Below, one piece after another: positions 1-21,813 of a DNA stretch of 34,964 nucleotides (position 1 is its first letter; each line of letters begins with the position of its first letter). This DNA is from Malacoraja senta. Lineage: Eukaryota. Location of the stretch: positions 62,001 through 96,964 of the forward strand of contig JAXLNO010003911.1 in the NCBI GenBank assembly GCA_038087875.1, in the 5' to 3' direction. The position numbers and the translations under genes are program-made. The notes below the pieces were generated by a model. That model was not told the DNA's origin and searched no databases. It saw only the letters and a program-made list of their open reading frames with translations.

Positions 1-357
1 CTGCAGAGACACCAAGTCTGCAGTCACTGGAAATATCATCAGCGGCTGGGGTGGTGAAGTTGACGTCCCGCCGCTACCCGCGGTCCCGCGGTCTTCTGTA
101 GCGGATCTCCCCGCGGACCGTCTAGTCTTCATTTTGTCCATATTTCTCGTTCAACTTGCAGCGACCCTGCAAAACAAGTTTGAACGAATACACGACCTCA
201 GAATAAGCTCTAGAACTTACCTGCGGGTCTTTTAACTTAACAGTGGCAGGAGCGACGCGCCTGTCAGCCAGTCGTGGCGCCATGCAGTAGATGTAATGAC
301 GCGCATGCGGGCTGGCGGGTTCTTCACGTAGTCACTCACTTGACTCCGAAGTGAAAT
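1..357 (-). mobile_element. 5' (left) end of a DIRS1-like YR retrotransposon, running off the window start
   Basis: 296-357 (tgacgcgcatgcg...cttcacgtagtcactcacttgactccgaagtgaaat) matches the DIRS terminus at 15988-16047. An ATG at 141 opens a frame (MDKMKTRRSAGRSATEDRG...) that stays open to base 1, in the position expected for gag. Confidence 0.8.
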
Positions 358-668
358 TGAAAGTTAAATAATGATCTTGCATGAAACTGTCTCCCAGGAC
401 GCGTTGCTTACTGCAGCTGTTCGCTGCTCCGGTCCCAGTCAGGATCCCTCTTTGCCCGCTCCTCTCTCACCACGGCTGATGGTGGCCGCATGCCGCCGAG
501 ACACAGGGTTGGTGAGCGGCGTTCTGGCGTTTGCTCTGGAATGTTCTCGAACATCTCACACATGAAAATATAAGTGTCATACATGTTATTACATATTGTG
601 CCACTGACAATTGTATCAGTTAGGATCCAGCATTGTAATTCAGCATAAGTGAGAAAATAAATGTTAAT

Positions 669-1663: not shown

Positions 1664-1937
1664 AAATCCAATGGAATGACGTGTAGTACGTATCGGAACG
1701 CAACGGAACGTCATTTCCACCATTTTAGGAATAAGATCCCGATCCCCGTTATGTCTCTCAGTTTAATCCACGTCAGTCCATTGGATTTAGCAGTTTATCT
1801 TGGTCTTTTAGCCTTCTATGTTAGACCATTATTATCTTTGTTTATAATAAATAAGGTGCTTCTTTTAAAAAATAATAAAAAGGGCAACTGCGTATAAAAT
1901 GGGCGACAATGCGCAATGAAAGGTCTCTGGACCACAT

Positions 1938-2002
1938 ATGACGCGTGTGCGGCTGGACGGGCTCTTCTTCACGTAGTCACTCACGTGACTCCGAAGTAAA
2001 AT
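1938..2002 (-). mobile_element. Orphan DIRS left terminus (65 bp)
   Basis: cttcacgtagtcactcacgtgactccgaagtaaaat (1967-2002) is 35/36 complementary to the ICR at 11543-11578. Confidence 0.85.
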
Positions 2003-2718
2003 TCCACAGATTCACAACTCTTTGGGTGGAAAAAGTCTTCCTCATCTCAGTCCTAAATGGCCGACCCCTTATTCTTAAACTGCGACGACCCCAACATAGG
2101 GATCATTTTTCCTGTATCTAGACTGTCCAATCCCTTAAGAATTTTATATGTATCTATAGGATCCCCTCTAATCCTTCTAAATGCCAGTGGATATAAGCCC
2201 AGTCGATCAATTCTTTCATCGCGCCATCCCGGGAATTAAGCTGGTGAACCTACGCTGTATTCCCTCTATGGCAATAATGTCCTTACAGAAATTAGGGAGA
2301 CCAAAACTGTACACAATACTCCAGGTGTGGTCTCACCAGTGCCCTGTACAACTGCAGTTGGACCTCCTTGCTCCTATACTGAAATCCTCTTGCTATGAAG
2401 GCCAACATGCCATTAGCTTTCTTCACTGCCCGCTGTATCTGCCTTCTTGTTCTTACCATCAAAGTGGATAACCTCACATTTATCCACATTATACTGAATC
2501 TTCCATGCATCTGCCCACTCACCCAACCTATCCATCAACCTGCAGCCTCATAGCATCCTCCTCGCAGCACACACTGCCACCCAGCTTTGTGCTATATACA
2601 AACGGAGATGTTACATTTAATTCCTTTGACTACAGTGTTAATATCTATTGTCAATAACTGGGGTCCCAGCACTGAGCCTTGTGGCACTCCGCTAGTCACT
2701 GCCTGCCATTATGAAAAG
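2003..2718 (-). mobile_element. CR1 LINE fragment (RT C-terminus) with internal deletions
   Basis: The minus ORF 2292-2522 contains QRAVKKANGMLAFIARGFQYRSKEVQLQLYRALVRPHLEYCVQFWSP. Confidence 0.9.
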
Positions 2719-2819
2719 TACCCAATGTCCTGTGTCCGCTCAGATCTGGCACCAGATAGGCAACACATCGTACTGTAGTCTCACCCATGGCCGCAGAAAC
2801 AGCAGAGTCCCCATCACTA

Positions 2820-3350
2820 TTTGAGCAATTTTGGATACCATATCTGAGGAAGGATATGCTGGCTCTGGAGAGGGTCCAGAGAAGGTTTACAAGAATGATC
2901 CCAGGAATGAGTAGGTTAACCTATGATGAGCGTTTGTCGGCACTGGGCATGTACTCGCTGGAGTTTAGAAGAATGAGGCGGGACCTCATTGATACGTACA
3001 GAATAGTGAAAGGATTTGATAGAGTGGATGTGGAGCAGATGTTTCCACCAGTGGTTGAGTCGAGGACTAGAGGGCGTAGCCTCAGAATTAAAGGATGTTC
3101 ATGTTGGAAGGAGAGGAGGAGGAATTTCTTCAGAGGGAGGTGAATCTGTGGAATTCTTTGCCAGAGAAGGCTGTGGAGGCCAAGTCAATGGATATTTTAA
3201 GGGATAGGTAGAACGATTTTTGATTAGTACGGGGTCAGGGGTTATGGGGAGAAGGCGGGAGAATGGGATTAGGAGGGAGAGATAGATCAGCAATGATTGA
3301 GTGGCAGAGTAGTCGATGGGCCGAATGGCCTAATTCTACTCCTATCACGG
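2820..3350 (+). mobile_element. CR1 LINE 3' fragment
   Basis: FWIPYLRKDMLALERVQRRFTRMIPG...RMRRDLIDTYRIVKG, followed by the CR1 3' UTR (gggccgaatggcctaattctactcc). Confidence 0.9.
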
Positions 3351-3408: not shown

Positions 3409-5536
3409 TGCAATGGAAGGCATTTAAAGACTGCATGGATGAACTACAAAAATTGTTCATCCCAGTTTGGCAAAATAATAAATCAGGGAAGGTAGTGCAT
3501 CCGTGGATAACAAGGGAAATCAGGGATAGTATCAAAGCAAAAGATGATGCGTACAAATTAGCCAGAAAAAGCAGCATACCAGAGGACTGGGAGAAATTCA
3601 GAGACCAGCAGAGGAGGACAAAGGGCTTATTTAGGAAAGGGAAAATGGATTAGGAAAGAAAACTGGCAGGGAACATAAAAACTGACTGCAAAAGTTTTTA
3701 TAGATATGTGAAGAGAAAGAGATTAGTTAAAACAAATGTAGGTCCCTTGCAGTCAGAAACAGGTGAATTGATCATGGGGAACAAGGATATGGCGGACCAA
3801 TTAAATTTGGTTCCGTCTTCACTGAGGAAGACATAAATAATCTGCCGGAAATAGCAGGGGGCCGCGGGTCAAAGGAGATGGAGGAACTGAGTGAAATCCA
3901 GGTTAGTCGGGAAGTGGTGTTGGGTAAATTGAATGGATTAAAGGCCGATAAATCACCAGGGCCAGATAGGCTGCATCCCAGAGTACTTAAGGAAGTAGCT
4001 CCAGAAATAGTGGATGCATTAGTTATAATTTTTCAAAACTCTTTAGATTCTGGAGTAGTTCCTGAGGATTGGAGGGTAGCAAACGTAACCCCACTTTTTA
4101 AGAAGGGAGGGAGAGAGAAAATGGGGAATTACAGACCAGTTAGTCTAACATCGGTAGTGGGGAAACTGCTAGAGTCAGTTATTAAAGATGGGATAGCAGC
4201 ACATTTGGAAAGTGGTGAAATCATTGGACAAAGTCAGCATGGATTTACGAAAGGTAAATCGTGTCTGACGAATCTTATAGAATTTTTCGAGGATGTAACT
4301 AGTAGAGTGGATAGGGGAGAACCAGTGGATGTGTTGTATCTGGACTTTCAGAAGGCTTTCGACAAGGTACCACATAAGAGATTAGGATACAAACATAAAT
4401 CACACGGTATTGGGGGTTCAGTATTGATGTGGATAGAGAACTGGCTGGCAAACAGGGAGCAAAGAGTAGGAGTAAACGGGTCCTTTTCACAATGGCAGGC
4501 AGTGACTAGTGGGGTACCGCAAGGCTCAGTGCTGGGACCCCAGCTATTTACAATTTATATTAATGATCTGGACGAGGGAATTGAAAGCAACATCTCCAAG
4601 TTTGCGGATGACACTAAGCTGGGGGGCAGTGTTAGCTGTGAGGAGGATGCTAGGAGACTGCAAGGTGACTTGGATAGGCTGGGTGAGTGGGCAAATGTTT
4701 GGCAGATGCAGTATAATGTGGATAAATGTGAGGTTATCCACTTTGGTGGCAAAAACGGGAAGGCAGACTATTATCTAAATGGTGGCCGATTAGGAAATGG
4801 GGAGATGCAGCGAGACCTGGGTGTCATGGTACACCAGTCATTGAAAGTAGGCATGCAGGTGCAGCAGGCAGTGAAGAAAGCGAATGGTATGTTGGCCTTC
4901 ATAGCAAGAGGATTTGAGTATAGGAGCAGGGAGGTTCTACTGCAGTTGTACAGGGTCTTGGTGAGACCACACCTGGAGTATTGCGTACACTTTTGGTCTC
5001 CAAATCTGAGGAAGGACATTATAGCCATAGAGGGAGTGCAGAGAAGGTTCACCAGACTGATTCCTGGGATGTCAGGACTTTCATATGAAGAAAGACTGGA
5101 TAGACTTGGCTTATACTCGCTAGAATTTAGGAGATTGAGAGGGGATCTTATAGAAACGTACAAAATTCTTATGGGGTTGGACAGGCTAGATGCAGGAAGA
5201 TTGTTCCCGATGTTGGGGATGTCCAGGACAAGGGGTCACAGCTTAAGGATAAGGGGGAAATCCTTTAAGACCGAGATGAGGAAAAACTTTTTCACACAGA
5301 GAGTGGTGAATCTCTGGAACTCTCTGCCACAGAGGGTAGTTGAGGCCAGTTCATTGGCTATATTTAAGAGGGAGTTAGATGTGGCCCTTGTGGCTAAAGG
5401 GATCAGGGGGTATGGAGAGAAGGCAGGTACGGGATAATGAGTTGGATGATCAGCCATGATCATATTGAATGGCGGTGCAGGCTCAAAGGGCCGAATGGCC
5501 TACTCCTGCACCTATTTTCTATGTATCTATGTATGT
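3409..5536 (+). mobile_element. 5'-truncated CR1 LINE with a 519-aa open RT segment (3878-5437)
   Basis: KSPGPD, NYRPVSLTS, YLDFQKAFDKVPH, GVPQGSVLGP and FADDTK motifs. The 3' stem ggtgcagg...cctgcacc and a (tatgta)-type tail end the element. Confidence 0.95.
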
Positions 5537-10319: not shown

Positions 10320-11241
10320 GCCAGAATTGGTCACCCTGTCCCTACTGCTGCTGCAATATACCCCCGAGGGGCCGTCACCCCAATAGTATGCAGAAGGCAG
10401 TGCTTGTAAGAGAGGGGGAGAGCCACAGAGAGTCCTGCACTACCCGCTGCCTCTTCTGACGACCACCCATGTGGCTGAACCTCATTACGATCATGGCTGA
10501 TCATCCACAATCAGTACCCCGGCCCTGCCTTCTCCCCATTCCCCTTGATTCCGCTAGCCCCAAGAGCTCTATCTAACTATTTTAAATGCATCCGGTGAAT
10601 TGGCCTCTGCTGCCTTCTGTGGCAGAGAATTCCACAAATTCACAACTCTCTGGGTGAAGTTTTTTCTCATCTCCGTCTTCACCGCGTGAACCTACGCTGC
10701 ACTGCCTCAATAGCAAGGATGTCTTTCTTCAAATTAGGAGACCAAATTTCACATAATACTCCAGATATGGTCTCAGCAGGGCCCTGTCCAACTGCAGAAG
10801 GACCTCTTTACTCCTGTACTCAAATCCTCTTGTTATGAAGGCCAACATTTCATTCGCTTTCTCCACTGCCTGTTGTACCCACATCTTTACTTTCAGTGTC
10901 TGATGCACAAGGACATCCAGGTCTCGTTCCACTTCCCTTTTTCCCTTGGTTCTGGACTCCCCCAACATCGGGAATGTGTTTTCAGCCTCTAGCATGTCCA
11001 AACTCTTAATAATCTTGTATGTTTCAATAATATCACCTCTCATCCTTCTAAATCCCAGAGTATACAAGCCCAGCCACTCCATTCTCTCAGGATATGACAA
11101 TCCCACCATCCCGGGAATTAACCTTGTAAAGCTCCGCTGCACTCCCTCAACAACCCCTGATTTCTGTGCTAATCAAGAATCTTTCTACCTATGCCTTAAA
11201 AATATCCACTGACCTGGCCTCCACAGCCTTCTGTGGCAAAG
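10320..11241 (-). mobile_element. Patchwork of CR1 fragments (ORF1 piece, RT C-terminus, 3' UTRs)
   Basis: The minus ORF 10729-11142 (QRSFTRLIPG...QQAVEKANEMLAFITRGFEYRSKEV) has its segments out of order. CR1 3' UTR sequence lies at 10485-10570 and 11155-11241. Confidence 0.8.
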
Positions 11242-11467
11242 AATAGTAAGATTAAACGAGAACTTACCAGTTTGAAGTTTGATCTTTATTTTATGAGGAG
11301 TTACGTTGGTGATTACGTGAAGAACCCCGTCAGGGCGCATGCGCGTCAATCTTCAAAGCAGCGGTATGAAATCACAGACACCATAATTGAAGTAACAAAT
11401 TAAGATGATCAACATGAGAACTACCATTATGACCTTTTTTCTATGAGAGAGGGTTGGGCGTGGCGGG

Positions 11468-11578
11468 CACGTAATCACCAACGTAACTCCTCATAAAATA
11501 AAGATCAAACTTCAAACTGGTAAGTTCTCGTTTAATCTTACTATTTTACTTCGGAGTTACGTGAGTGACTACGTGAAG
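11468..11578. other. DIRS internal complementary region (ICR) copying the circle junction
   Basis: 11468-11545 is the perfect 78-bp reverse complement of 11242-11319. 11543-11578 is 34/36 complementary to 16012-16047. Confidence 0.93.
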
Positions 11579-11788
11579 ATTTTAAAGCTCTGATTTTTAT
11601 GCCGCAGATCAAAATCCCGGCTTCTCACTGCATCGATTGACTCTGAGTATCATCAATAATGCTGTAAACATGACATTGCATATCATGCAAAAACAAACAC
11701 TTTTATTTTGGGTCATAAAACAACCAATAAACCCTCTTAATGTAGGGGCAACAAACGAAACAGAATGAAACAGTATTGAAAACAGACT

Positions 11789-12750
11789 TTAAACAATAGC
11801 AACAGCACTCAATATTGAGTTGGCAAACAGCCCTCCATCGGCATTCGGCCGATGGTAGTATTGCTGAAACACAAGTTCATTTTTCCAACCTGCGGCTTTT
11901 AATATATGGTCGATGGGAATGTCCATCGCCCTGGCCGCGGATGTTGCTACTGCGCTAGTGGAATGAGATGTAAACACATAAATGTTAATTCCTGCCTGAA
12001 CCAACTCTTGCTTTAACCACCTTGAGATAGTCTGAACTGCCACTCTTTTATGTTGGCTTCTTGTAACTGAGAAATAATCCTGTTTCTTCTTGTCTTAAAG
12101 CCCTTGTGGCTTCAATGTAATGTAACAAATGTGTCCTTACACATAAACATGGAGCTGTAGGATATGCTGAGAACACAATCTTAAAACCTGTCACACCTGG
12201 CCTGCTTTGTTTGAGCAGGTCAGAAATATAAAACAGAACATTCTCTGTATTCACTTCCATTCTCTCGGACTGAAGTTTTTGGAAATTCTGCACTCTCTGT
12301 ACTGACACCAATGCCATTAGCATAGCCAATTTCATGGTTAATTTTAACAAAGTTATAGACCTGACAGGGACCCAATGACGAAGTATGTTACGAACAACAC
12401 TTACCTCGCAGATTACCATATACCTAGGCTTAGGCGGTTTGGAATTAAAGATTCCTTTCATCAACCTAGATATGAGAGGGTGAGAACCTATACTTTGTGT
12501 CCGTGTACCTATTACAAGATATGCCGACAAAGCACTTCTAGCTGTATTGATAGCAGTATAGCTAAGACCTTCATCATAATAAAGTGTAGATAAACTCTAA
12601 CACATTTTCAATAACTACAGTATCATATTGAATATTCTTTTGAACACAATATTGTTCCCATTTTTTTTTTCATGTCATATACTGTTTTTGAGTACTGTTT
12701 CTCCAGGCTGCAGTGAGTATATCCACCGTTGGCCTAGAAAGTCCTCGACC
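11789..12750 (-). pseudogene. DIRS tyrosine recombinase, frameshifted
   Basis: GSHPLISRLMKGIFNSKPPKPRY, KLAMLMALVSVQRVQ, TISRWLK, HSTS (usually HSTR), AAGW and FQQYY. Confidence 0.9.
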
Positions 12751-12896
12751 AATGTAAGGCATTCTTAAAACCTGCAAATTAACAGATCCATACCATCACA
12801 TAACGGATGAACTTAATGCGTTACTGGATGCTCCAGCAAATTCCTACTGTTTGGAATCGGCAAAAGGAGGTTGGATCGCTATCTGTAACATCAAAG

Positions 12897-13080
12897 GGAA
12901 CCATGGTTGAATCAGGCAATTTGGTATCACCAAAACCCCTGAAGCGGCATCCTGCTTGATTTTCTCAAACACCGACCTATGAGGCAGAATGGTGGGAAAA
13001 TGTACACAAACATATCATCCCAATTTAGTGAAAAAGCATCAATTGCCACTGCCCCTGGATCTGGTGCCTATGAAACATAT
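12897..13080 (-). pseudogene. DIRS N6-adenine methyltransferase-like domain remnant
   Basis: YVS*APDPGAVAIDAFSLNWDDMFVYIFPPFCLIGRCLRK, a 1-nt frameshift, then IKQDAASGVLVIPNCLIQPWFP. Confidence 0.8.
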
Positions 13081-13249
13081 TTTGGCCTTCCATATAGAAG
13101 TACTATGTTCTTGAACACATCCTGGTTCCACATCCACTCTGTGTTATGATGGAATTTTCGTGAGCTGCCATCTGGTACTACATTAAGTTTCCCTGGGAGA
13201 TAGATAGCTCCAATCCAAATCTCTCTATCCCTACTCCAGGTCCAATTGT

Positions 13250-14483
13250 ATTTGCCAACCTGTCACATGATAACAATTTGATTCCACCCATGTGATTCAT
13301 ATCAGCAACTGCTGTAGTGTTGTCTATTTTGCACTGCACATGCAAACTAGTTTAGTTAGTGCCATAAGCCTTGAGTCCATAAAATACTCTTGGTTAATTC
13401 CCCATGTTTGCAGAAGCAATGTTCATCTGTCTCCACCGCTGGATCTTGTATCAGTAGCACCCTACCCAAGTGCTCTGACATCTGTCTGCAACTCATGGAA
13501 GCTTGGTCCAATAACACTTTGGAACTACTAGTGGACACATGCTGAATCCACCATTGTACATCAGCAACAGCCTCTATTGATAGAAGCATAGGTCTATTAT
13601 AATGACCCCAATGTATCCTCAATGCTTGTTCCTTTGACCTTTGTAATTGTAGATAATAAAGTGGCCATATTGAACTGCTGGAAATGCTGCCAGCCATTAC
13701 CACAGCAGACTTGTCACCTGGCTAATTGAAGGCTGTGTGTTAGCAATTAACTTGATATAGCTCTTAATTAGCTCTACCCTTTTTTGCCTGGGCAAGGTCA
13801 CAATGATGTTGATTAAGTCCATTGTGAACCCAACTAGTCAATTTGTGTCACAGGTATAAATTTAGATTTCTCTGGATAGCTTATAAAGCCCAATTAAAAA
13901 TGGTTTTACCAACTGCCACTGATGCTTCAGCTGTTTCCTTTGATTGTCCTACAATCAAGATATTATCTAGTTAAGCCATGAACACATGACCTTGACTTCT
14001 CATCATGCCTAGAATAGGTTTTAACAACTTTGTAATACCTCTAGGAGCTGAAGAGAAACCATTAGGCAGTGGATTGTATTGGCATAATTGCCCCATCCAG
14101 CTGAATTTTAAATCTTCTATCCTGCAAATGAACAGACACTGAATCCGCATCTTTAAGATCTCCTTCACAAACGTTTCCATCTTAAAATGTCTATACCGTA
14201 CAAAAGGGTTAAGACTATTCAGGTCCGTATAATTCTGCATCCCCCCATCCTTTTTTGGTCTGGGAAAGATATTGGACACAAACTGATGGCTTTGGTAAAC
14301 TGCCTTAGCAATTACACCTTTATTACATAAGCTTGCAAGTTCCAGCTGAACTTCCAATTGTTCAGTGATACTGAAGTCAAACTCCTTTTTTGGAACATGT
14401 TGCATGGGTAAATCAGAATTTGCATTAAGCTTTATTTGATGCCCTTGAATAACCTTCAGTATAAACATATCTGAGGTAAACAT
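13250..14483 (-). pseudogene. DIRS reverse transcriptase and RNase H, disabled
   Basis: FVSNIFPRPKKDGG, DLNSLN, HFKMET and LPNGFSSAPR. The YLDD motif has decayed to *LDN, with TAA at 13973-13971. DVQWWIQH occurs at the RT/RH junction. Confidence 0.88.
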
Positions 14484-14539
14484 TTAATTGTATCACATTA
14501 GATCTGTCTACATGAGAACCAGACCCTCTTACCTCCTTA

Positions 14540-15950
14540 CCACCTGGCATTCTTCCCCGGCCTTGAGCTGGATATCTCACCTCCGTGGCGGTGCTACAGC
14601 CGAACGCCAACTGCGCTGCATCGTAGCTGGACTCGTCCCTTGCCCGGACCAGTCTGCTCCCTTATAGGGATACTTCCGCTTTGGTGAATATGTGGCTGCC
14701 GTCTTAGCCTCCTCCTCCAGCTCCTTCACCTGCTGTGCGAAATCCTCGCCAAACAGCTGTGCCGGTTGCACTGTGCCAGGCTGGCAGAGTGAAGCATATT
14801 TAGCATTGATGGTTGGTCTAATCGCATCTTGCGGAGGCAGTTGATCTCAAAGTGGGCACTCCACAATAGCGCCTTTTGTTGTAATTTGTCATGGCCTCTC
14901 CATCCACCATCCTGGCAAAGCTCGTTATACCAGATGCCAGCAACTTTAAAAATATGCTGGAGCTTCACATGCTCCTGGGCTTTCATTAGTATGCCCATCT
15001 TGCCCCAATTCTTCCTGTTCCCAACAGGAACTTTTAACAGTCCACAGTTGATTGGGGCTTCATACTTCGTTACTGTCTCATCCATTGTCAGCTCCTGTAG
15101 CTTATGTGAGACTTGGTAATTTATGCTGGTGGCAAGTTCCTCACCCAGAGGCTCACCAGCGTCCGACGACATGGCAAACTGTGCTGCACACGGTGTCAGC
15201 TCTGGCAGCTGCCTTCTCTCCCTTTGGAAGTCGTCGGACTCAGGGTCAGAGCGTATCTGCCCTTCTGCACTCACCTCTTGCAAAGAGGGTGCTTTCAAGC
15301 AGGCCTCTACTAGGCACTGCCAGCGGAGCCGTCCCCACGGCCTCCCGCCTGCACAACTCCTCCTGGAGTATGGCTTTATGAAGCAGACCTCTCCTAGGCA
15401 CTGCCAGCGGAGCCTTCCTTAAGGCTTCCCGCCTGCACAACTCCTCCTGGAGTGTGGCTTTATGAAGCAGACCTCTCCTAGGCACTGCCAGCGGAGCCTT
15501 CTCTATGACTTCCCTCCAGCACTACTCCTCCTGGAGCGTCTCTGTGGAGCAGCCCCTGTATGAGCTGCTCCTTTTGGATAACCGCTGGGGAACGGTATCC
15601 TGTCCCCGACGGGACTCTCGTGACCCGACTCTGCGGAGTCTATAGCCCTTACTGACTTGGGTTATGCCTACCGCCCGACTGGCGTTGGCTGTGTACCCGG
15701 CTGGGCACTTTGCCACGTCTGTCGCCGCACCGCTACCGGCTTGCGACTCCCCCGAGGTGACAGGCTGCCTTTCAGAGACTGCGTCCCGCAGCTCTCTCTC
15801 TCCTTGTCGGCAGCAGCCTGCACCTTTTCCTTGTTCCTGTATGTGTGGGAAAAAACACACAGAAACACTTTCTTTACTTTTCTCTAACTCCTCCAAAGTC
15901 TCCCCGACTTTGGTGGAGCTGTAATTACTCACCTGTAGCAAGAGCTCCAT
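14540..15950 (-). pseudogene. DIRS gag-like ORF1, fragmented
   Basis: EAPINCGLLKVP and QLFGEDFAQQVKELEE segments sit between the left terminus and RT. Confidence 0.65.
15292..15535. repeat. 84-bp tandem repeat (about 2.8 copies) in the DIRS gag region
   Basis: cctct.ctaggcactgccagcggagcc starts at 15304, 15388 and 15472. Confidence 0.95.
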
Positions 15951-16574
15951 GCTCCTGCTGCCGTTGTCGCCAATGCGTCAGACGTAATGACGCGCATGCG
16001 CCCTGACGGGTCTTCACGTAGTCACTCACATGACTCCGAAGTAAAATCAAGTGCTTAAAGTGCAAAACAAAAAGCCAGCAGGTAGATGCAGCACACAACG
16101 CAGAATGTGATTAGCATATTGGCGTTCAAAGTAGGTTACTATTGTAATTATGGTACATGATGTTGCTAAGGACATATCAGGAGCACTGTGCACAGCTTGG
16201 TCCTGAAATTTAAGAAAGGATATATTAATATTGGATATCAGCTAGAAGAGATTTCTGGAATAAGCAAGTATTGCCTAACTATGAATGGCTGAAATCACTG
16301 GTTCTGTGTCCCTTAGAGATGACAAGAAACAGAGTTAACCTTATGAATGTATTAAAGAGGCATGATGTGGTGGTGAATTGATGGATAATGCGTGGATATA
16401 TTCTAAAAGAACAGGGAATTGTGTCTTATGTGGAATAAGCACAGTAAAGGAGTTGAGGCCTCAGTCATATCAGTTGTTATCAACATAAATTGCTAGATAG
16501 CTCTAATTTGTACAAATGCAGGGCAGTCTATTGAGAATTTCTGTCATGTTTGATAAACTTAATTTAACTCTTCA

Positions 16575-18204: not shown

Positions 18205-21200
18205 AGAAACATAGAAACATAGAAAATAGGTGCAGGAGTAGGCTATTCGGCCCTTCGAGCCTGCACCGCCATTCAATATGATCATGGCTGATCATCCAAC
18301 TCAGTATCCTGTACCTGCCTTCTCTCCATACCCCCTGATCCCTTTAGCCACAAGGGCCACATCTAACTCCCTCTTAAATATAGCCAATGAACTGGCCTCA
18401 ACTACCTTCTGTGGCAGAGAGTTCCAGAGATTCACCACTCTCTGTGTGAAAAAAAAAATTCTCATCTCGGTCCTAAAGGATTTCCCCTTAATCCTTAAAC
18501 TGTGACCCCTTGTCCTGGACTTCCCCAACATTGGGAACAATCTTCCTGCATCTAGCCTGTCCAACCCCTTAAGAATTTTGTACGTTTCTATAAGATCCCC
18601 CCTCAATCTTCTAAATTCTAGCGAGTACAAACCGAGTCTATCCAGTCTTTCTTCATATGAAAGTCCTGACATCCCAGGAATCAGTCTGGTGAACCTTCTC
18701 TGTACTCCCTCTATGGCAAGAATGTATTTCCTCAGATTAGGAGACCAAAACTGTACGCAATACCTCAGGTGTGGTCTCACCAAGACCCGGTACAACTGCA
18801 GTAGAACCTCCCTGCTCCTATACTCAAATCCTTTTGCTATGAATGCTAACATACCATTCGCCTTCTTCACTGCCTGCTGCACCTGTATGCCTACTTTTAA
18901 TGACTGGTGTACCATGACACCCAGGTCTCGTTGCATCTCCCCTTTTCCTAATCAGCCACCATTCTGATAATAGTCTACTTTCCTGTTTTTGCCGCCAAAG
19001 TGGACAACCTCACATTTATTCACATTATACTGCATCTGCCATGCATTTTCCCCACTCAACCAGCCTATCCAAGTCACCTTGCAGCCTCCGAGCATCCTCC
19101 TCACAGCTAACACTGCCCCCCAGCGATGTGTCATCCGCAAACTTGGAGATGTTGCATTCAAATCCCTCGTCCAAATCATTAATATTAGCAATGTTACAAA
19201 ATTTTGAGATTTAAAAAATAAAGTCTGCAATTTATCCCATCAGATAAAGCATAAAAAGAAGTTTAATTTGACACTTAATTCACTTTCATATCTTCAGTAT
19301 TAAAAAAGTTATGGCCATTATCATACTCAGAAATTAGCATCTAGTTCCCTATTGCTTTTCCATTGACTTAACACAAAAGCTGTGATCGAGGACAGTTAAA
19401 AGCCCATAACTTTCTTAAAAATTATGGTAACTGAAAGAAATTTTCAGGTATTATAGATTGAAGCATTCTGAAACAAATATGAAACAATCTTACTTCGAAG
19501 ACATGAAAGTAAAGCATATAATTAGTTAGTTACCTAATTGTAGCTAATTACAAAATTCAATTACTAGATCTAAACATCTATCAATTTCTTAAGAATAGAT
19601 TAACATTTTTAAATAGCCTAAGTGTCCAAATAACATTCACACAATAATTCACAATATAACATAATTTTTAAATCTAATTTTCATGAATTTACAGGCCAAA
19701 TGGAAGGAATTGAATGTTTAATACCTGTAAATTAATGGGGATTTAATTCATCTTGCGAGTGAGAATTACTGGAACGCGATCTTTTGGAACGTTCATTTGC
19801 GGTGAATTTAACCCCGTATTGGCATGAAAAATACTGCCGTTAATTCGGGGAATAAAATCACCGTGTCGCATGACAAAATGTGAATTAAAGGCTTCTTAAG
19901 AAGCACTTTTATACATTTAAAGAAAGCACTTTTGTTTACCTGTCCATTGTGTGAAATCCGTCCCCGTTATTGGCGTTGACGCTTCAGGAGCTGCTTTTAA
20001 AATGACTCTAGCGCTGACATTGATGATTTAATTTTAAAAAAAAATTCACAAATCGCCGGTAGGAACGATTTTGTCAGCGAAGTTTTGTACTCCAACAAAA
20101 TATTTCCAGGACAAGGGAGAAACCCGCGTTTTAACCCCGCCCCCCCCTTAAAGGCGCCAAAATCGCGCACACGGCCAGTGGCAGAATTACAGCGCGACTG
20201 AAGGTAAGTTTTGTAACATACCTATTAATATATATCGTAAATAGCTGGGGTCCCAGCACTGAGCCATAGCGGTACCCCACTAGTCACTGCCTGCCATTGT
20301 GAAAAGGACCCGTTTACTCCTACTCTTTGCTTCCTGTCTGCCAGCCAGTTCTCTATCCACATCAATACTGAACCCCCAATACCGTGTGCTTTAAGTTTGT
20401 ATACTAATCTCTTATGTGGGACCTTGTCGAAAGCCTTCTGAAAGTCCAGATATAACACATCCACTGGTTCTCCCTTACCCACTCTACTAGTTACATCCTC
20501 GAAAAATTCTATGATTCGTCAGACATGATTTACCTTTCATAAATCCATGCTGACTTTGTCCAATGATTTCACCACTTTCCAAATGTGCTGCTATCCCATC
20601 TTTAATAACTGATTCTAGCAGTTTCCCCACTACCGACGTTAGACTAACTGGTCTGTAATTCCCCGTTTTCTCTCTCCCTCCCTTTTTAAAAAGTGGGGTT
20701 ACATTAGCTACCCTCCAATCCTCAGGAACTACTCCAGAATCTAAAGAGTTTTGAAAAATTATCACTAATGCATCCACTATTTCTGGGGCTACTTCCTTAA
20801 GTACTGTGGGATGCAGCCTATCTGGCCCTGGGGATTTATCGGCCTTTAATCCATTCAATTTACCTAACACCACTTCCCGGCTAACCTGGATTTCACTCAG
20901 TTCCTCCATTTGACCCCCGGTCCCCTGCTATTTCCGGCAGATTATTTATGTCTTCCTTAGTGAAGACAGAACCAAAGTAGTTATTCAATTGGTCTGCCAT
21001 GTCCTTGTTCCCCATGATCAATTCACCTGTTTCTGACTGCAAGGGACCTACATTTGTTTTAACTAATCTTTTTCTCTTCACATATCTATAAAAGCTTTTG
21101 CAGTCAGTTTTTATGTTCCCTGCCAGTTTTCTTTCATAATCTATTTTCCCTTTCCTAATTAAGCCCTTTGTCCTCCTCTGCTGGACTCTGAATTTCTCCC

Positions 21201-21813
21201 AGTCCTCTGGTAGGCTGCTTTTTCTGGCTAATTTGTACGCTTCATCTTTTGTTTTGATACTATCCCTGATTTCCCTTGTTATCCACGGATGCACTACCTT
21301 CCCTGATTTATTTTTTTGCCAAACTGGGATGAACAATTGTTGTGGTTCATCCATGCAGTCTTTAAATGCCTTCCATTGCATATCTAAAATCAACCCATTA
21401 ATAATCAATTGCCAGTCTATCTTGGTCAATTCACTTCTCATACCCTCAAAGTTACCTTTCTTTAAGTTCAGGACCTTTGTTTCTGAATTAACAATGTCAC
21501 TCTCCATCCTAATGAAGAACTCAACCATATTATGGTCACTCTTGCCCAAGGGGCCACGCAAAACAAGACTGCTAATTAACCCTTCCTCATTACTCAATAC
21601 CCAATCTAGAATAGCCTGCTCTCTCGTTGGTTCCTCTACATGTTGGTTTAGAAAACTATACCGCATACATTCCAAGAAATCCTCTTCCTCAGCACCCCTG
21701 CCAATTTGATTCACCCCATCTATATGTAGATTGAAGTCACCCATTATAACTGTTTTACCTTTGTTGCACGCATTTCTAATTTCCTGTTTGATGCCATCCC
21801 CAACTCCACTACT
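18205..21813 (-). mobile_element. 5'-truncated CR1 LINE inserted antisense into L1 ORF1
   Basis: (agaaacat)n tail at 18205. Minus ORFs 18301-18936, 20225-20482, 20487-20909 and 20893-21828 carry CR1 APE and RT motifs. Same subfamily as 3409-5536. Confidence 0.95.
19186..20224. mobile_element. 1039-bp non-autonomous DNA transposon inserted in CR1
   Basis: Terminal inverted repeats tagcaatgttacaaaa / ttttgtaacataccta (14/16) and a 7-bp TSD ttaatat (19179-19185, 20225-20231). Removing it restores contiguous CR1 sequence. Confidence 0.88.

What the first reader, a model, noticed from the sequence alone, without database searches (positions are those of the whole stretch)
1938..2030. Two DIRS junctions fall at exactly the same nucleotide of a CR1 motif
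Seen: the orphan DIRS left end reads ...gtaaAAT|tccacagattcac (2000-2013). The right end of the full element, 9 kb away, reads ttctgtggcaaag|AATagtaag (11229-11250). Joining the two flanks gives tggcaaagAATtccacagattcac, the uninterrupted CR1 sequence present in this window at 3140-3176 (reverse strand) and nearly so at 10615-10650. The full element's own left flank (caagtgc at 16048) is not CR1. Inference: either this DIRS family targets a specific site in the abundant CR1 RT tail (the NLWNSLP codons), or one insertion was split by recombination between DIRS copies or by duplication. Either way it is an unexplained coincidence at single-base resolution.
Basis: partly seen in the sequence, partly recalled or inferred. 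Interest (0 to 1): 0.75.

Follow-up and report, generated by a model that had tools for sequence, protein, structure and literature searches.

The report
Two DIRS insertions, same CR1 spot
Two different copies of a recombinase-using jumping gene (DIRS) in a skate genome sit at exactly the same base of a conserved motif in two different CR1 LINE copies, which hints that this jumping gene prefers that motif as a landing site, but only a genome-wide count can prove it.

Summary
The flank left of the long DIRS element (…ggcaaag|AAT, 11235-11244) and the flank right of the orphan DIRS end (AAT|tccacagattcac, 2000-2015) rejoin, with one shared AAT, into a sequence 24/24 identical to the intact CR1 site at 3140-3163.

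They are not two halves of one insertion. At diagnostic alignment columns the 5' half (2003-2723) sides 0:18 with the CR1 lineage of copy 2826-3345, while the 3' half (11152-11241, only 90 nt) sides 18:6 with it. The orphan DIRS end differs from the long element's ends (55/65). The long element also has its own left end, which matches its own internal complementary region.

So two separate tyrosine-recombinase integrations used the same ATT of GTGAATCTGTGG-ATT-CTTTGCC (the VNLWNSLP codons) in two CR1 lineages, both in the same orientation. In this window, two random ATT sites are homologous repeat positions with probability about 1-2 x 10^-4, or roughly 10^-3 for the junction pairs present.

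A site preference beyond the known 3-bp core is therefore the best reading. It rests on n = 2. The two other DIRS junctions here are not in CR1, and no other skate copies could be reached.

The parts
11242..16047 (-). DIRS1-like retrotransposon 'c3', 4806 bp, sense on the minus strand. Termini and internal complementary region (ICR) are complete; the coding region is decayed.
   Evidence: Stop-free pieces are collinear with a DIRS element in locus L001: gag-like, RVT_1 gene, RT_RNaseH region, tyrosine recombinase (tblastn E 1e-5 to 1e-37). The YR C-terminus gives a weak Pfam PF00589 hit. YR-piece homologues carry PF00589, best E 9e-45. Frames are broken into >15 pieces.
16011..16047 (-). Outer left end of c3 (sense strand reads ATTTTACTTCGGAGTCATGTGAGTGACTACGTGAAGA), with terminal ATT at 16045-16047.
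   Evidence: 35/37 complementary to ICR part 11543-11579 (I2). The inner ITR 15988-16010 is 23/23 complementary to 11326-11348 (I4).
11242..11348 (-). Right ITR of c3, including the 78-nt outer extension and terminal ATT (AAT on the + strand, 11242-11244).
   Evidence: 11242-11319 is 78/78 complementary to 11468-11545 (I1).
11468..11579 (-). Internal complementary region. It is the complement of the right end (11468-11545) and of the left end (11543-11579), overlapping in one ATT (11543-11545). It therefore records the circle junction ...cttact-ATT-ttacttcgg....
   Evidence: This geometry matches the DIRS1 model described in PMC3266345 and PMC7192593.
11152..11241 (-). CR1L: a 90-nt CR1 fragment directly 3' of the target ATT (sense CTTTGCCACAGAAGG...), of the lineage of copy 2826-3345.
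   Evidence: 78/90 identical to 3156-3243, against 63-64/90 to the other copies. Diagnostic columns 18:6. Homology ends at 11151/11152 against another CR1 fragment.
1936..2002 (-). Orphan DIRS left end 'c2'. About 65 nt are clearly homologous, and weak similarity runs to about 1898. Terminal ATT is at 2000-2002.
   Evidence: It is 55/65 identical to the c3 left end. Its terminal 39 nt are 95% identical to the c1 end. Nothing in 358-1937 resembles DIRS interior.
2003..2723 (-). CR1R: a 5'-truncated CR1 body ending exactly 5' of the target ATT (sense ...GTGAATCTGTGGA), of the lineage of copies 3409, 8888, 10482 and 18209.
   Evidence: It maps to reference positions 4478-5319 of copy 3409-5532. 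It is 74-80% identical to that lineage against 61% to copy 2826. Diagnostic columns 0:18.
3140..3163 (+). Intact ('empty') CR1 target site GTGAATCTGTGG-ATT-CTTTGCCA in copy 2826-3345, with ATT at 3153-3155.
   Evidence: 0 mismatches to the rejoined flanks. It codes V-N-L-W-N-S-L-P (read).
10620..10643 (-). Second intact target site, in copy 10482-10944.
   Evidence: 2 mismatches; ATT kept.
275..357 (-). Third DIRS left end 'c1', in the same orientation. Its body runs off the window start and its flank (358 onward) is not CR1.

Best explanation
Two independent DIRS1-like retrotransposon copies, from two sub-lineages of one family, each integrated by tyrosine-recombinase crossover between the single ATT of their circle junction and the same ATT of the conserved CR1 sequence GTGAATCTGTGG-ATT-CTTTGCC (codons VNLWNSLP near the end of the LINE reverse-transcriptase ORF). 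They did so in two CR1 copies of different lineages and in the same orientation relative to CR1. The most likely reason is that the recombinase, or the integration complex, prefers this CR1 motif beyond the 3-bp core, making it an insertion hot spot.

Shown here: the termini, the ICR and the one-ATT junction geometry; the exact rejoining of the flanks; the different lineages of the two CR1 halves; and the non-identity of the two DIRS copies.

Inferred: the preference itself, and the later events that removed the partner flank of each junction. The orphan end was truncated 65-105 bp inside the element. The long element's left flank is unique DNA, most simply because of a deletion by recombination (homologous or recombinase-mediated) between two DIRS copies lying in the same orientation.
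For: Exact junctions and 24/24 rejoining. ITR/ICR structure with overlapping ATT, as in the published DIRS1 integration model. DIRS identity of the long element. CR1 halves of different lineages: identities 86.7% vs 70% and 61% vs 74-80%, diagnostic columns 18:6 vs 0:18. The orphan end is 55/65 identical to c3, while the c3 ends fit each other and the c3 ICR at 113/115 and 23/23. Chance that two random oriented ATT sites of this window are homologous repeat positions is 1.1-1.7e-4. Three further ATT-bearing copies of the site are unoccupied, so 2 of 5 are occupied, against about 0.2% occupancy of ATT sites overall. An unchecked note from another window of this genome (s1-140790) reports two distinct DIRS elements abutting the same CR1 nucleotide.
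Against: Only two junctions support it. The two other DIRS junctions in the window (c3 left, c1 left) lie in non-CR1 sequence with no resemblance to the motif. Neither CR1 junction has its partner flank, so each needs an extra, unobserved rearrangement. There is no similarity between the circle junction arms and the CR1 motif beyond ATT (read). There is no hairpin signal at the site. The scan looked at many windows, so a 10^-3 coincidence is weakened by multiple looks. The one related element fetched from another organism (L001) is not inserted in a LINE.
Confidence: 0.5

Rival explanations
1. Two independent insertions at ATT sites that fall on the same CR1 nucleotide by chance. CR1 tails are very abundant here, and the recombinase needs only ATT.
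For: Published DIRS1 elements are described as needing only the trinucleotide. Two of four junctions are outside CR1. CR1 fragments fill much of the window. The scan read about 1200 windows of this genome, so rare coincidences will surface.
Against: The window-specific null is 1.1-1.7e-4 per pair. Same orientation and same base in two CR1 lineages. A second, unchecked report of the same kind exists elsewhere in the genome.
Confidence: 0.22
2. One insertion into a single, mosaic CR1 copy (body of one lineage, tail of another), later split. For example, a circle carrying that CR1 recombined into a head-to-tail DIRS junction, or there was a duplication plus DIRS-DIRS exchange. This would put the 5' half 9 kb upstream of the 3' half.
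For: The flanks rejoin perfectly. The order D-end/CR1-5'half ... CR1-3'half/D is a circular permutation of a simple insertion. LINE lineages can swap tails at conserved stretches (general knowledge, not tested here).
Against: All five other CR1 copies in the window are of one type on both sides of the site. Diagnostic columns are 0:18 vs 18:6. The orphan DIRS end is 15% different from c3, while c3's own repeats are 113/115 identical, so the orphan end is not c3's lost end. The model needs at least two further events.
Confidence: 0.12
3. The right-hand junction is not a DIRS integration into CR1. Instead, a 5'-truncated, template-switched CR1 mosaic (11241 down to 10482) has its 5' end abutting the DIRS terminus, or the DIRS later entered at that boundary.
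For: In sense orientation the block reads as four same-strand CR1 pieces in the wrong order (reference 5319-5410, 5030-5234, 4793-5052, 5267-5468). This looks like serial template jumps. The far flank of c3 is unique DNA.
Against: It needs the CR1 5' truncation to fall on the very base used by the other DIRS junction. The other junction (a 3'-cut CR1 body abutting a DIRS end) cannot arise in this way.
Confidence: 0.08
4. Assembly artefact: repeats were joined wrongly, producing false neighbours for DIRS ends.
For: The region is a dense patchwork of repeats. No read-level data are available.
Against: There are no gaps (0 N). The junctions fall exactly at element termini with an intact ATT, which is what recombination gives, not a collapse inside repeats. 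The DIRS ends involved are 13-15% different from each other, so an assembler would be unlikely to confuse them.
Confidence: 0.05

Closest known systems
DIRS1-like tyrosine-recombinase retrotransposons (Dictyostelium DIRS-1; vertebrate DrDIRS1, XtDIRS, TnDIRS1)
   Same: Inverted terminal repeats with unequal outer extensions. An internal complementary region that is the complement of both ends joined. ATT at both termini, overlapping in the ICR. No target-site duplication. Gene order gag-like, RT/RNase H region, YR. Integration is modelled as crossover between the 3-bp junction and an identical genomic trinucleotide (PMC3266345, PMC7192593).
   Different: The cited papers name no target requirement beyond the trinucleotide for vertebrate DIRS1-like elements, and they state that YR specificity has not been tested experimentally. 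Here two copies share one position in a LINE motif.
Dictyostelium DIRS-1 preference for inserting into existing DIRS-1 copies
   Same: A YR retrotransposon that lands preferentially inside another repeat, a 'safe' site (PMC7192593).
   Different: There the target is the element itself, in centromeric clusters. Here the candidate target is a different class of element (a LINE), at one defined nucleotide.
Site-specific retrotransposons that home to repeats (R1/R2 in rDNA, Tx1L in Tx1D, microsatellite-specific LINEs)
   Same: Sequence-specific insertion into a multicopy target, which spares genes (from general knowledge, not tested here).
   Different: Those use endonucleases and target-primed reverse transcription. 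Here the enzyme would be a tyrosine recombinase acting on a circular or ICR-bridged DNA copy.

Membership tests
DIRS1-like retrotransposon (DIRS order) | Encodes a tyrosine recombinase instead of an integrase or endonuclease | tested here: met
   The pieces 12596-12051 and 12094-11792 (minus strand) match YR proteins carrying PF00589 (best E 9e-45, 46% identity). The direct Pfam hit is weak (E 9e-4, below the curated cut-off). tblastn to the L001 YR gives E 1e-37. The gene is broken by frame changes.
DIRS1-like retrotransposon (DIRS order) | Reverse transcriptase / RNase H block upstream of the YR | tested here: met
   The L001 genes with RVT_1 and RT_RNaseH align collinearly to 14069-13828 and 13661-12639 (E 3e-10 and 1e-23). 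Direct Pfam scans of the decayed pieces found nothing.
DIRS1-like retrotransposon (DIRS order) | Inverted terminal repeats plus an internal complementary region matching both outer ends | tested here: met
   78/78, 35/37 and 23/23 inverted pairs at the expected places.
DIRS1-like retrotransposon (DIRS order) | Same trinucleotide at both termini, complementary to the ICR junction; no target-site duplication | tested here: met
   ATT (sense) at 16045-16047 and 11242-11244. A single ATT at 11543-11545 in the ICR. The flanks share nothing else.
DIRS1-like retrotransposon (DIRS order) | Methyltransferase-like domain between RNase H and YR (separates DIRS1-like from Ngaro and VIPER) | not tested
   The region 13350-12640 aligns to the L001 pol product, but no domain-level test was made.
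CR1-like LINE | LINE reverse transcriptase ORF with 5'-truncated copies | tested here: met
   A 556-aa open piece at 3767-5434 hits RVT_1 at E 1.8e-31. Copies are truncated at various 5' points.
CR1-like LINE | Placement in the CR1 clade rather than L2, Rex1 or another clade | not tested
No phylogeny or library comparison was run.
Site-specific (target-homing) retrotransposon | A large share of genomic copies at one target sequence | not testable with these tools
   Only 2 of 4 junctions in the window are at the site. The skate genome is not in any searchable collection.

The most novel reading that the evidence does not exclude
This skate DIRS family homes to a roughly 20-bp sequence in the conserved RT tail of CR1 LINEs. 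Its tyrosine recombinase would then recognise the motif around the ATT core, so a YR retrotransposon uses another retrotransposon as a multicopy safe landing pad. That would give the first defined natural target sequence for a eukaryotic retrotransposon recombinase.
Probability: 0.45. Interest if true: 0.65.

Novelty: new variant of a known kind. Interest (0 to 1): 0.45.

Why it matters
How DIRS recombinases choose targets is not known. The cited literature names only a 3-bp match and says the specificity has not been tested experimentally. A defined, multicopy target motif would make this testable, for example with a circle-junction substrate against the CR1 motif and mutants of it. It would explain DIRS/CR1 nesting in cartilaginous-fish genomes. 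It would also add a recombinase-based case to the list of retrotransposons that home to repeats. If the census shows no enrichment, this is an ordinary pair of nested insertions.

Tried and rejected
1. Split single insertion. Rejected on the CR1 lineage test and on DIRS end comparison. Simple reciprocal exchange between direct DIRS copies also cannot place the CR1 5' half upstream of the 3' half.

2. The 1645-bp stretch 358-2002 as a complete short DIRS derivative sitting head-to-tail on c1. Its 358 end looks only about 65% like a DIRS right end by eye. It has no right ITR or ICR and no similarity to DIRS interior. Dropped.

3. A hairpin or inverted-repeat recombination site (CTGTGG-N9-CCACAG) at the CR1 motif. 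Single-strand DNA folds are no better than shuffles, and the pairing is not kept in all copies. Dropped.

4. Extended similarity between the circle-junction arms and the CR1 motif. Only about 4 of 13 in-register matches on each side, read by eye. Dropped.

5. Getting more copies of the family. The YR-piece protein search gave nothing above 46% identity apart from two short fragments on contigs of about 1 kb. A scan of metagenome contigs with the conserved left-end motif gave 0 hits.

6. One related element from an unidentified eukaryote (L001). It has the same architecture and ATT ends, but its flanks show no LINE RT similarity.

7. Literature searches for DIRS target preference. These found only the trinucleotide model and the DIRS-1-into-DIRS-1 preference.

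Full report
**What is there**

The window comes from a skate genome (earlier notes) and is a dense patchwork of CR1-like LINE fragments (self-comparison; map against copy 3409-5532). It holds three DIRS left ends, all in the same orientation with the element sense on the minus strand:
- c1 at 275-357, whose body runs off the window start;
- c2 at about 1936-2002, an orphan end;
- c3, whose left end is at 16011-16047.

c3 spans 11242-16047 (4806 bp). Its termini are complete:
- The right end 11242-11319 is 78/78 complementary to 11468-11545.
- The left end 16011-16047 is 35/37 complementary to 11543-11579.
- The inner ITRs 11326-11348 and 15988-16010 are 23/23 complementary.

The two ICR parts overlap in one ATT (11543-11545). 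The ICR therefore records a circle junction ...cttact-ATT-ttacttcgg.... This is the DIRS1 geometry described in PMC3266345 and PMC7192593, where integration is a crossover between the 3-bp junction and an identical genomic trinucleotide, without target duplication.

The interior of c3 is collinear with a DIRS element fetched from another organism: gag-like, RVT_1, RT_RNaseH region, YR. The YR piece finds PF00589 proteins at E 9e-45. The frames are broken into more than 15 pieces, and direct Pfam hits are weak or absent. So c3 has complete ends but decayed coding sequence. Its nearly perfect end/ICR repeats suggest that a defective copy was mobilised fairly recently.

**The observation**

- ...ccgaagtaaAAT|tccacagattcac at 2000-2015;
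- ...tctgtggcaaag|AATagtaag at 11230-11250;
- ...gtaaAAT|caagtgc at 16045-16054.

Rejoining the two CR1 flanks with a single AAT gives a string identical at 24/24 positions to the intact site GTGAATCTGTGGAATTCTTTGCCA at 3140-3163. It differs at 2 positions from the site at 10620-10643. On the sense strand the site codes V-N-L-W-N-S-L-P near the end of the LINE RT ORF. The RT identity of these copies was confirmed with RVT_1 at E 1.8e-31. Both DIRS copies have the same orientation as the CR1 they abut.

**One insertion or two?**

An alignment of all CR1 copies covering the site shows two lineages: copy 2826-3345, and the group of copies 3409, 18209, 10482 and 8888.

| Fragment | Position | Identity to copy 2826 | Identity to the other group | Diagnostic columns (2826 type : other type) |
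|---|---|---|---|---|
| 3' half beside c3 | 11152-11241 | 78/90 | 63-64/90 | 18:6 |
| 5' half beside c2 | 2003-2160 | 61% | 74-80% | 0:18 |

The diagnostic columns are those where copy 2826 differs from a unanimous other group. All five other copies are of one type on both sides of the site, so a mosaic CR1 is not suggested by anything in the window.

The DIRS ends point the same way:
- c2 is 55/65 identical to the c3 left end. It shares sub-lineage features with c1, and their terminal 39 nt are 95% identical.
- c3 has its own left end, which fits its ICR and its right ITR.
- The geometry, with the CR1 5' half lying 9 kb upstream of the 3' half on the plus strand, is a circular permutation that a single exchange between direct repeats cannot produce.

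I conclude that these are two independent integrations.

**Chance or preference?**

The window has 1768 oriented ATT sites. Comparing the 12+12-nt contexts of all site pairs, 1.1-1.7 x 10^-4 of pairs are homologous repeat positions. With three insertions (3 pairs) or four junctions (6 pairs), this gives roughly 10^-3.

Seen another way, 2 of the 5 ATT-bearing copies of this CR1 site are occupied, against about 0.2% occupancy of ATT sites overall. Two further copies have ACT in place of ATT and are empty.

The scan read about 1200 windows of this genome, 69 of them with notes mentioning DIRS. Multiple looks therefore weaken the figure, but the expected number of such coincidences stays well below one. 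An unchecked first-reader note on another piece of the genome (s1-140790) reports two distinct DIRS elements abutting the same CR1 nucleotide. I could not see its sequence.

Points against a strict preference:
- The left flanks of c3 and c1 are not CR1.
- I found no extended similarity between the circle junction and the motif.
- There is no hairpin signal at the site.

**What happened to the partner flanks?**

c2 is cut 65-105 bp inside the element. The 1.6 kb that follows contains a spliced THAP-domain gene (Pfam THAP E 2e-11) and has no DIRS similarity.

The c3 left flank is unique DNA close to an exon of an MHC class I-like gene (note s1-140134). The simplest route to this state is a deletion by recombination between two DIRS copies in the same orientation, either homologous or recombinase-mediated at the left junctions. 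That would remove the CR1 5' half. This is inference, not shown.

The 90-nt CR1 piece beside c3 is itself followed by three more same-strand CR1 pieces in the wrong order. So a template-switched CR1 mosaic is a minor rival for that junction.

**Limits**

No other copies of this family could be fetched:
- Protein search gave at most 46% identity, apart from two short fragments.
- A motif scan of metagenome contigs gave none.
- The one related element examined (L001) has ATT ends and a similar right-end motif (GGTAAGT.CTCGTTTAA), but its flanks are not LINE.

The papers found say that the specificity of DIRS recombinases has not been tested, and that DIRS-1 tends to insert into itself.

**Verdict**

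The split-insertion reading is rejected. A site preference for the CR1 motif is the best reading at about 50%, with plain coincidence and a mosaic-CR1 single event as the main rivals. The decisive test is a flank census in the skate assembly.

Noticed in passing
window 296-358 and 1938-2003, with 669-1443 between them: Two DIRS left ends lie in direct orientation exactly 1645 bp apart. Their terminal 39 nt are 95% identical and both are followed by T. They bracket a spliced THAP-domain gene on the minus strand (Pfam THAP E 2e-11). I do not know whether the bracketed stretch moved as a unit, for example as a recombinase-made circle integrated at the c1 junction.
   Followed up: partly
window 10482-11241: Four CR1 fragments lie on the same strand but in the wrong order (reference positions 5468-5267, 5052-4793, 5234-5030, 5410-5319, reading the plus strand). 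This looks like serial template switching or nested truncated insertions whose remainders are missing.
   Followed up: partly
window 3409-5532 and 18209-21380: Two CR1 copies in inverted orientation are 93-95% identical and have the same 5' truncation point. The second copy is interrupted by a 1038-bp insertion at 19186-20223. This could be a segmental inverted duplication rather than two insertions.
   Followed up: no
window 15297-15548: Three tandem 84-bp units (77-100% identical) lie inside the gag-like region of the DIRS element.
   Followed up: no
window 15840-15935 and 170-235 (minus strand): Both DIRS 5' regions carry a GT...AG intron-like stretch just after the left ITR (cagGTGAGT...acAG and cagGTAAGT...gcAG). 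Earlier notes on this genome discuss DIRS splicing.
   Followed up: no
L001 9150-9192 versus window 11242-11275: A DIRS relative from an unidentified eukaryote shares the right-end motif GGTAAGT(T)CTCGTTTAA and ATT termini with the skate element, although its recombinase is only 46% identical. The terminal sequence appears more conserved than the protein.
   Followed up: partly
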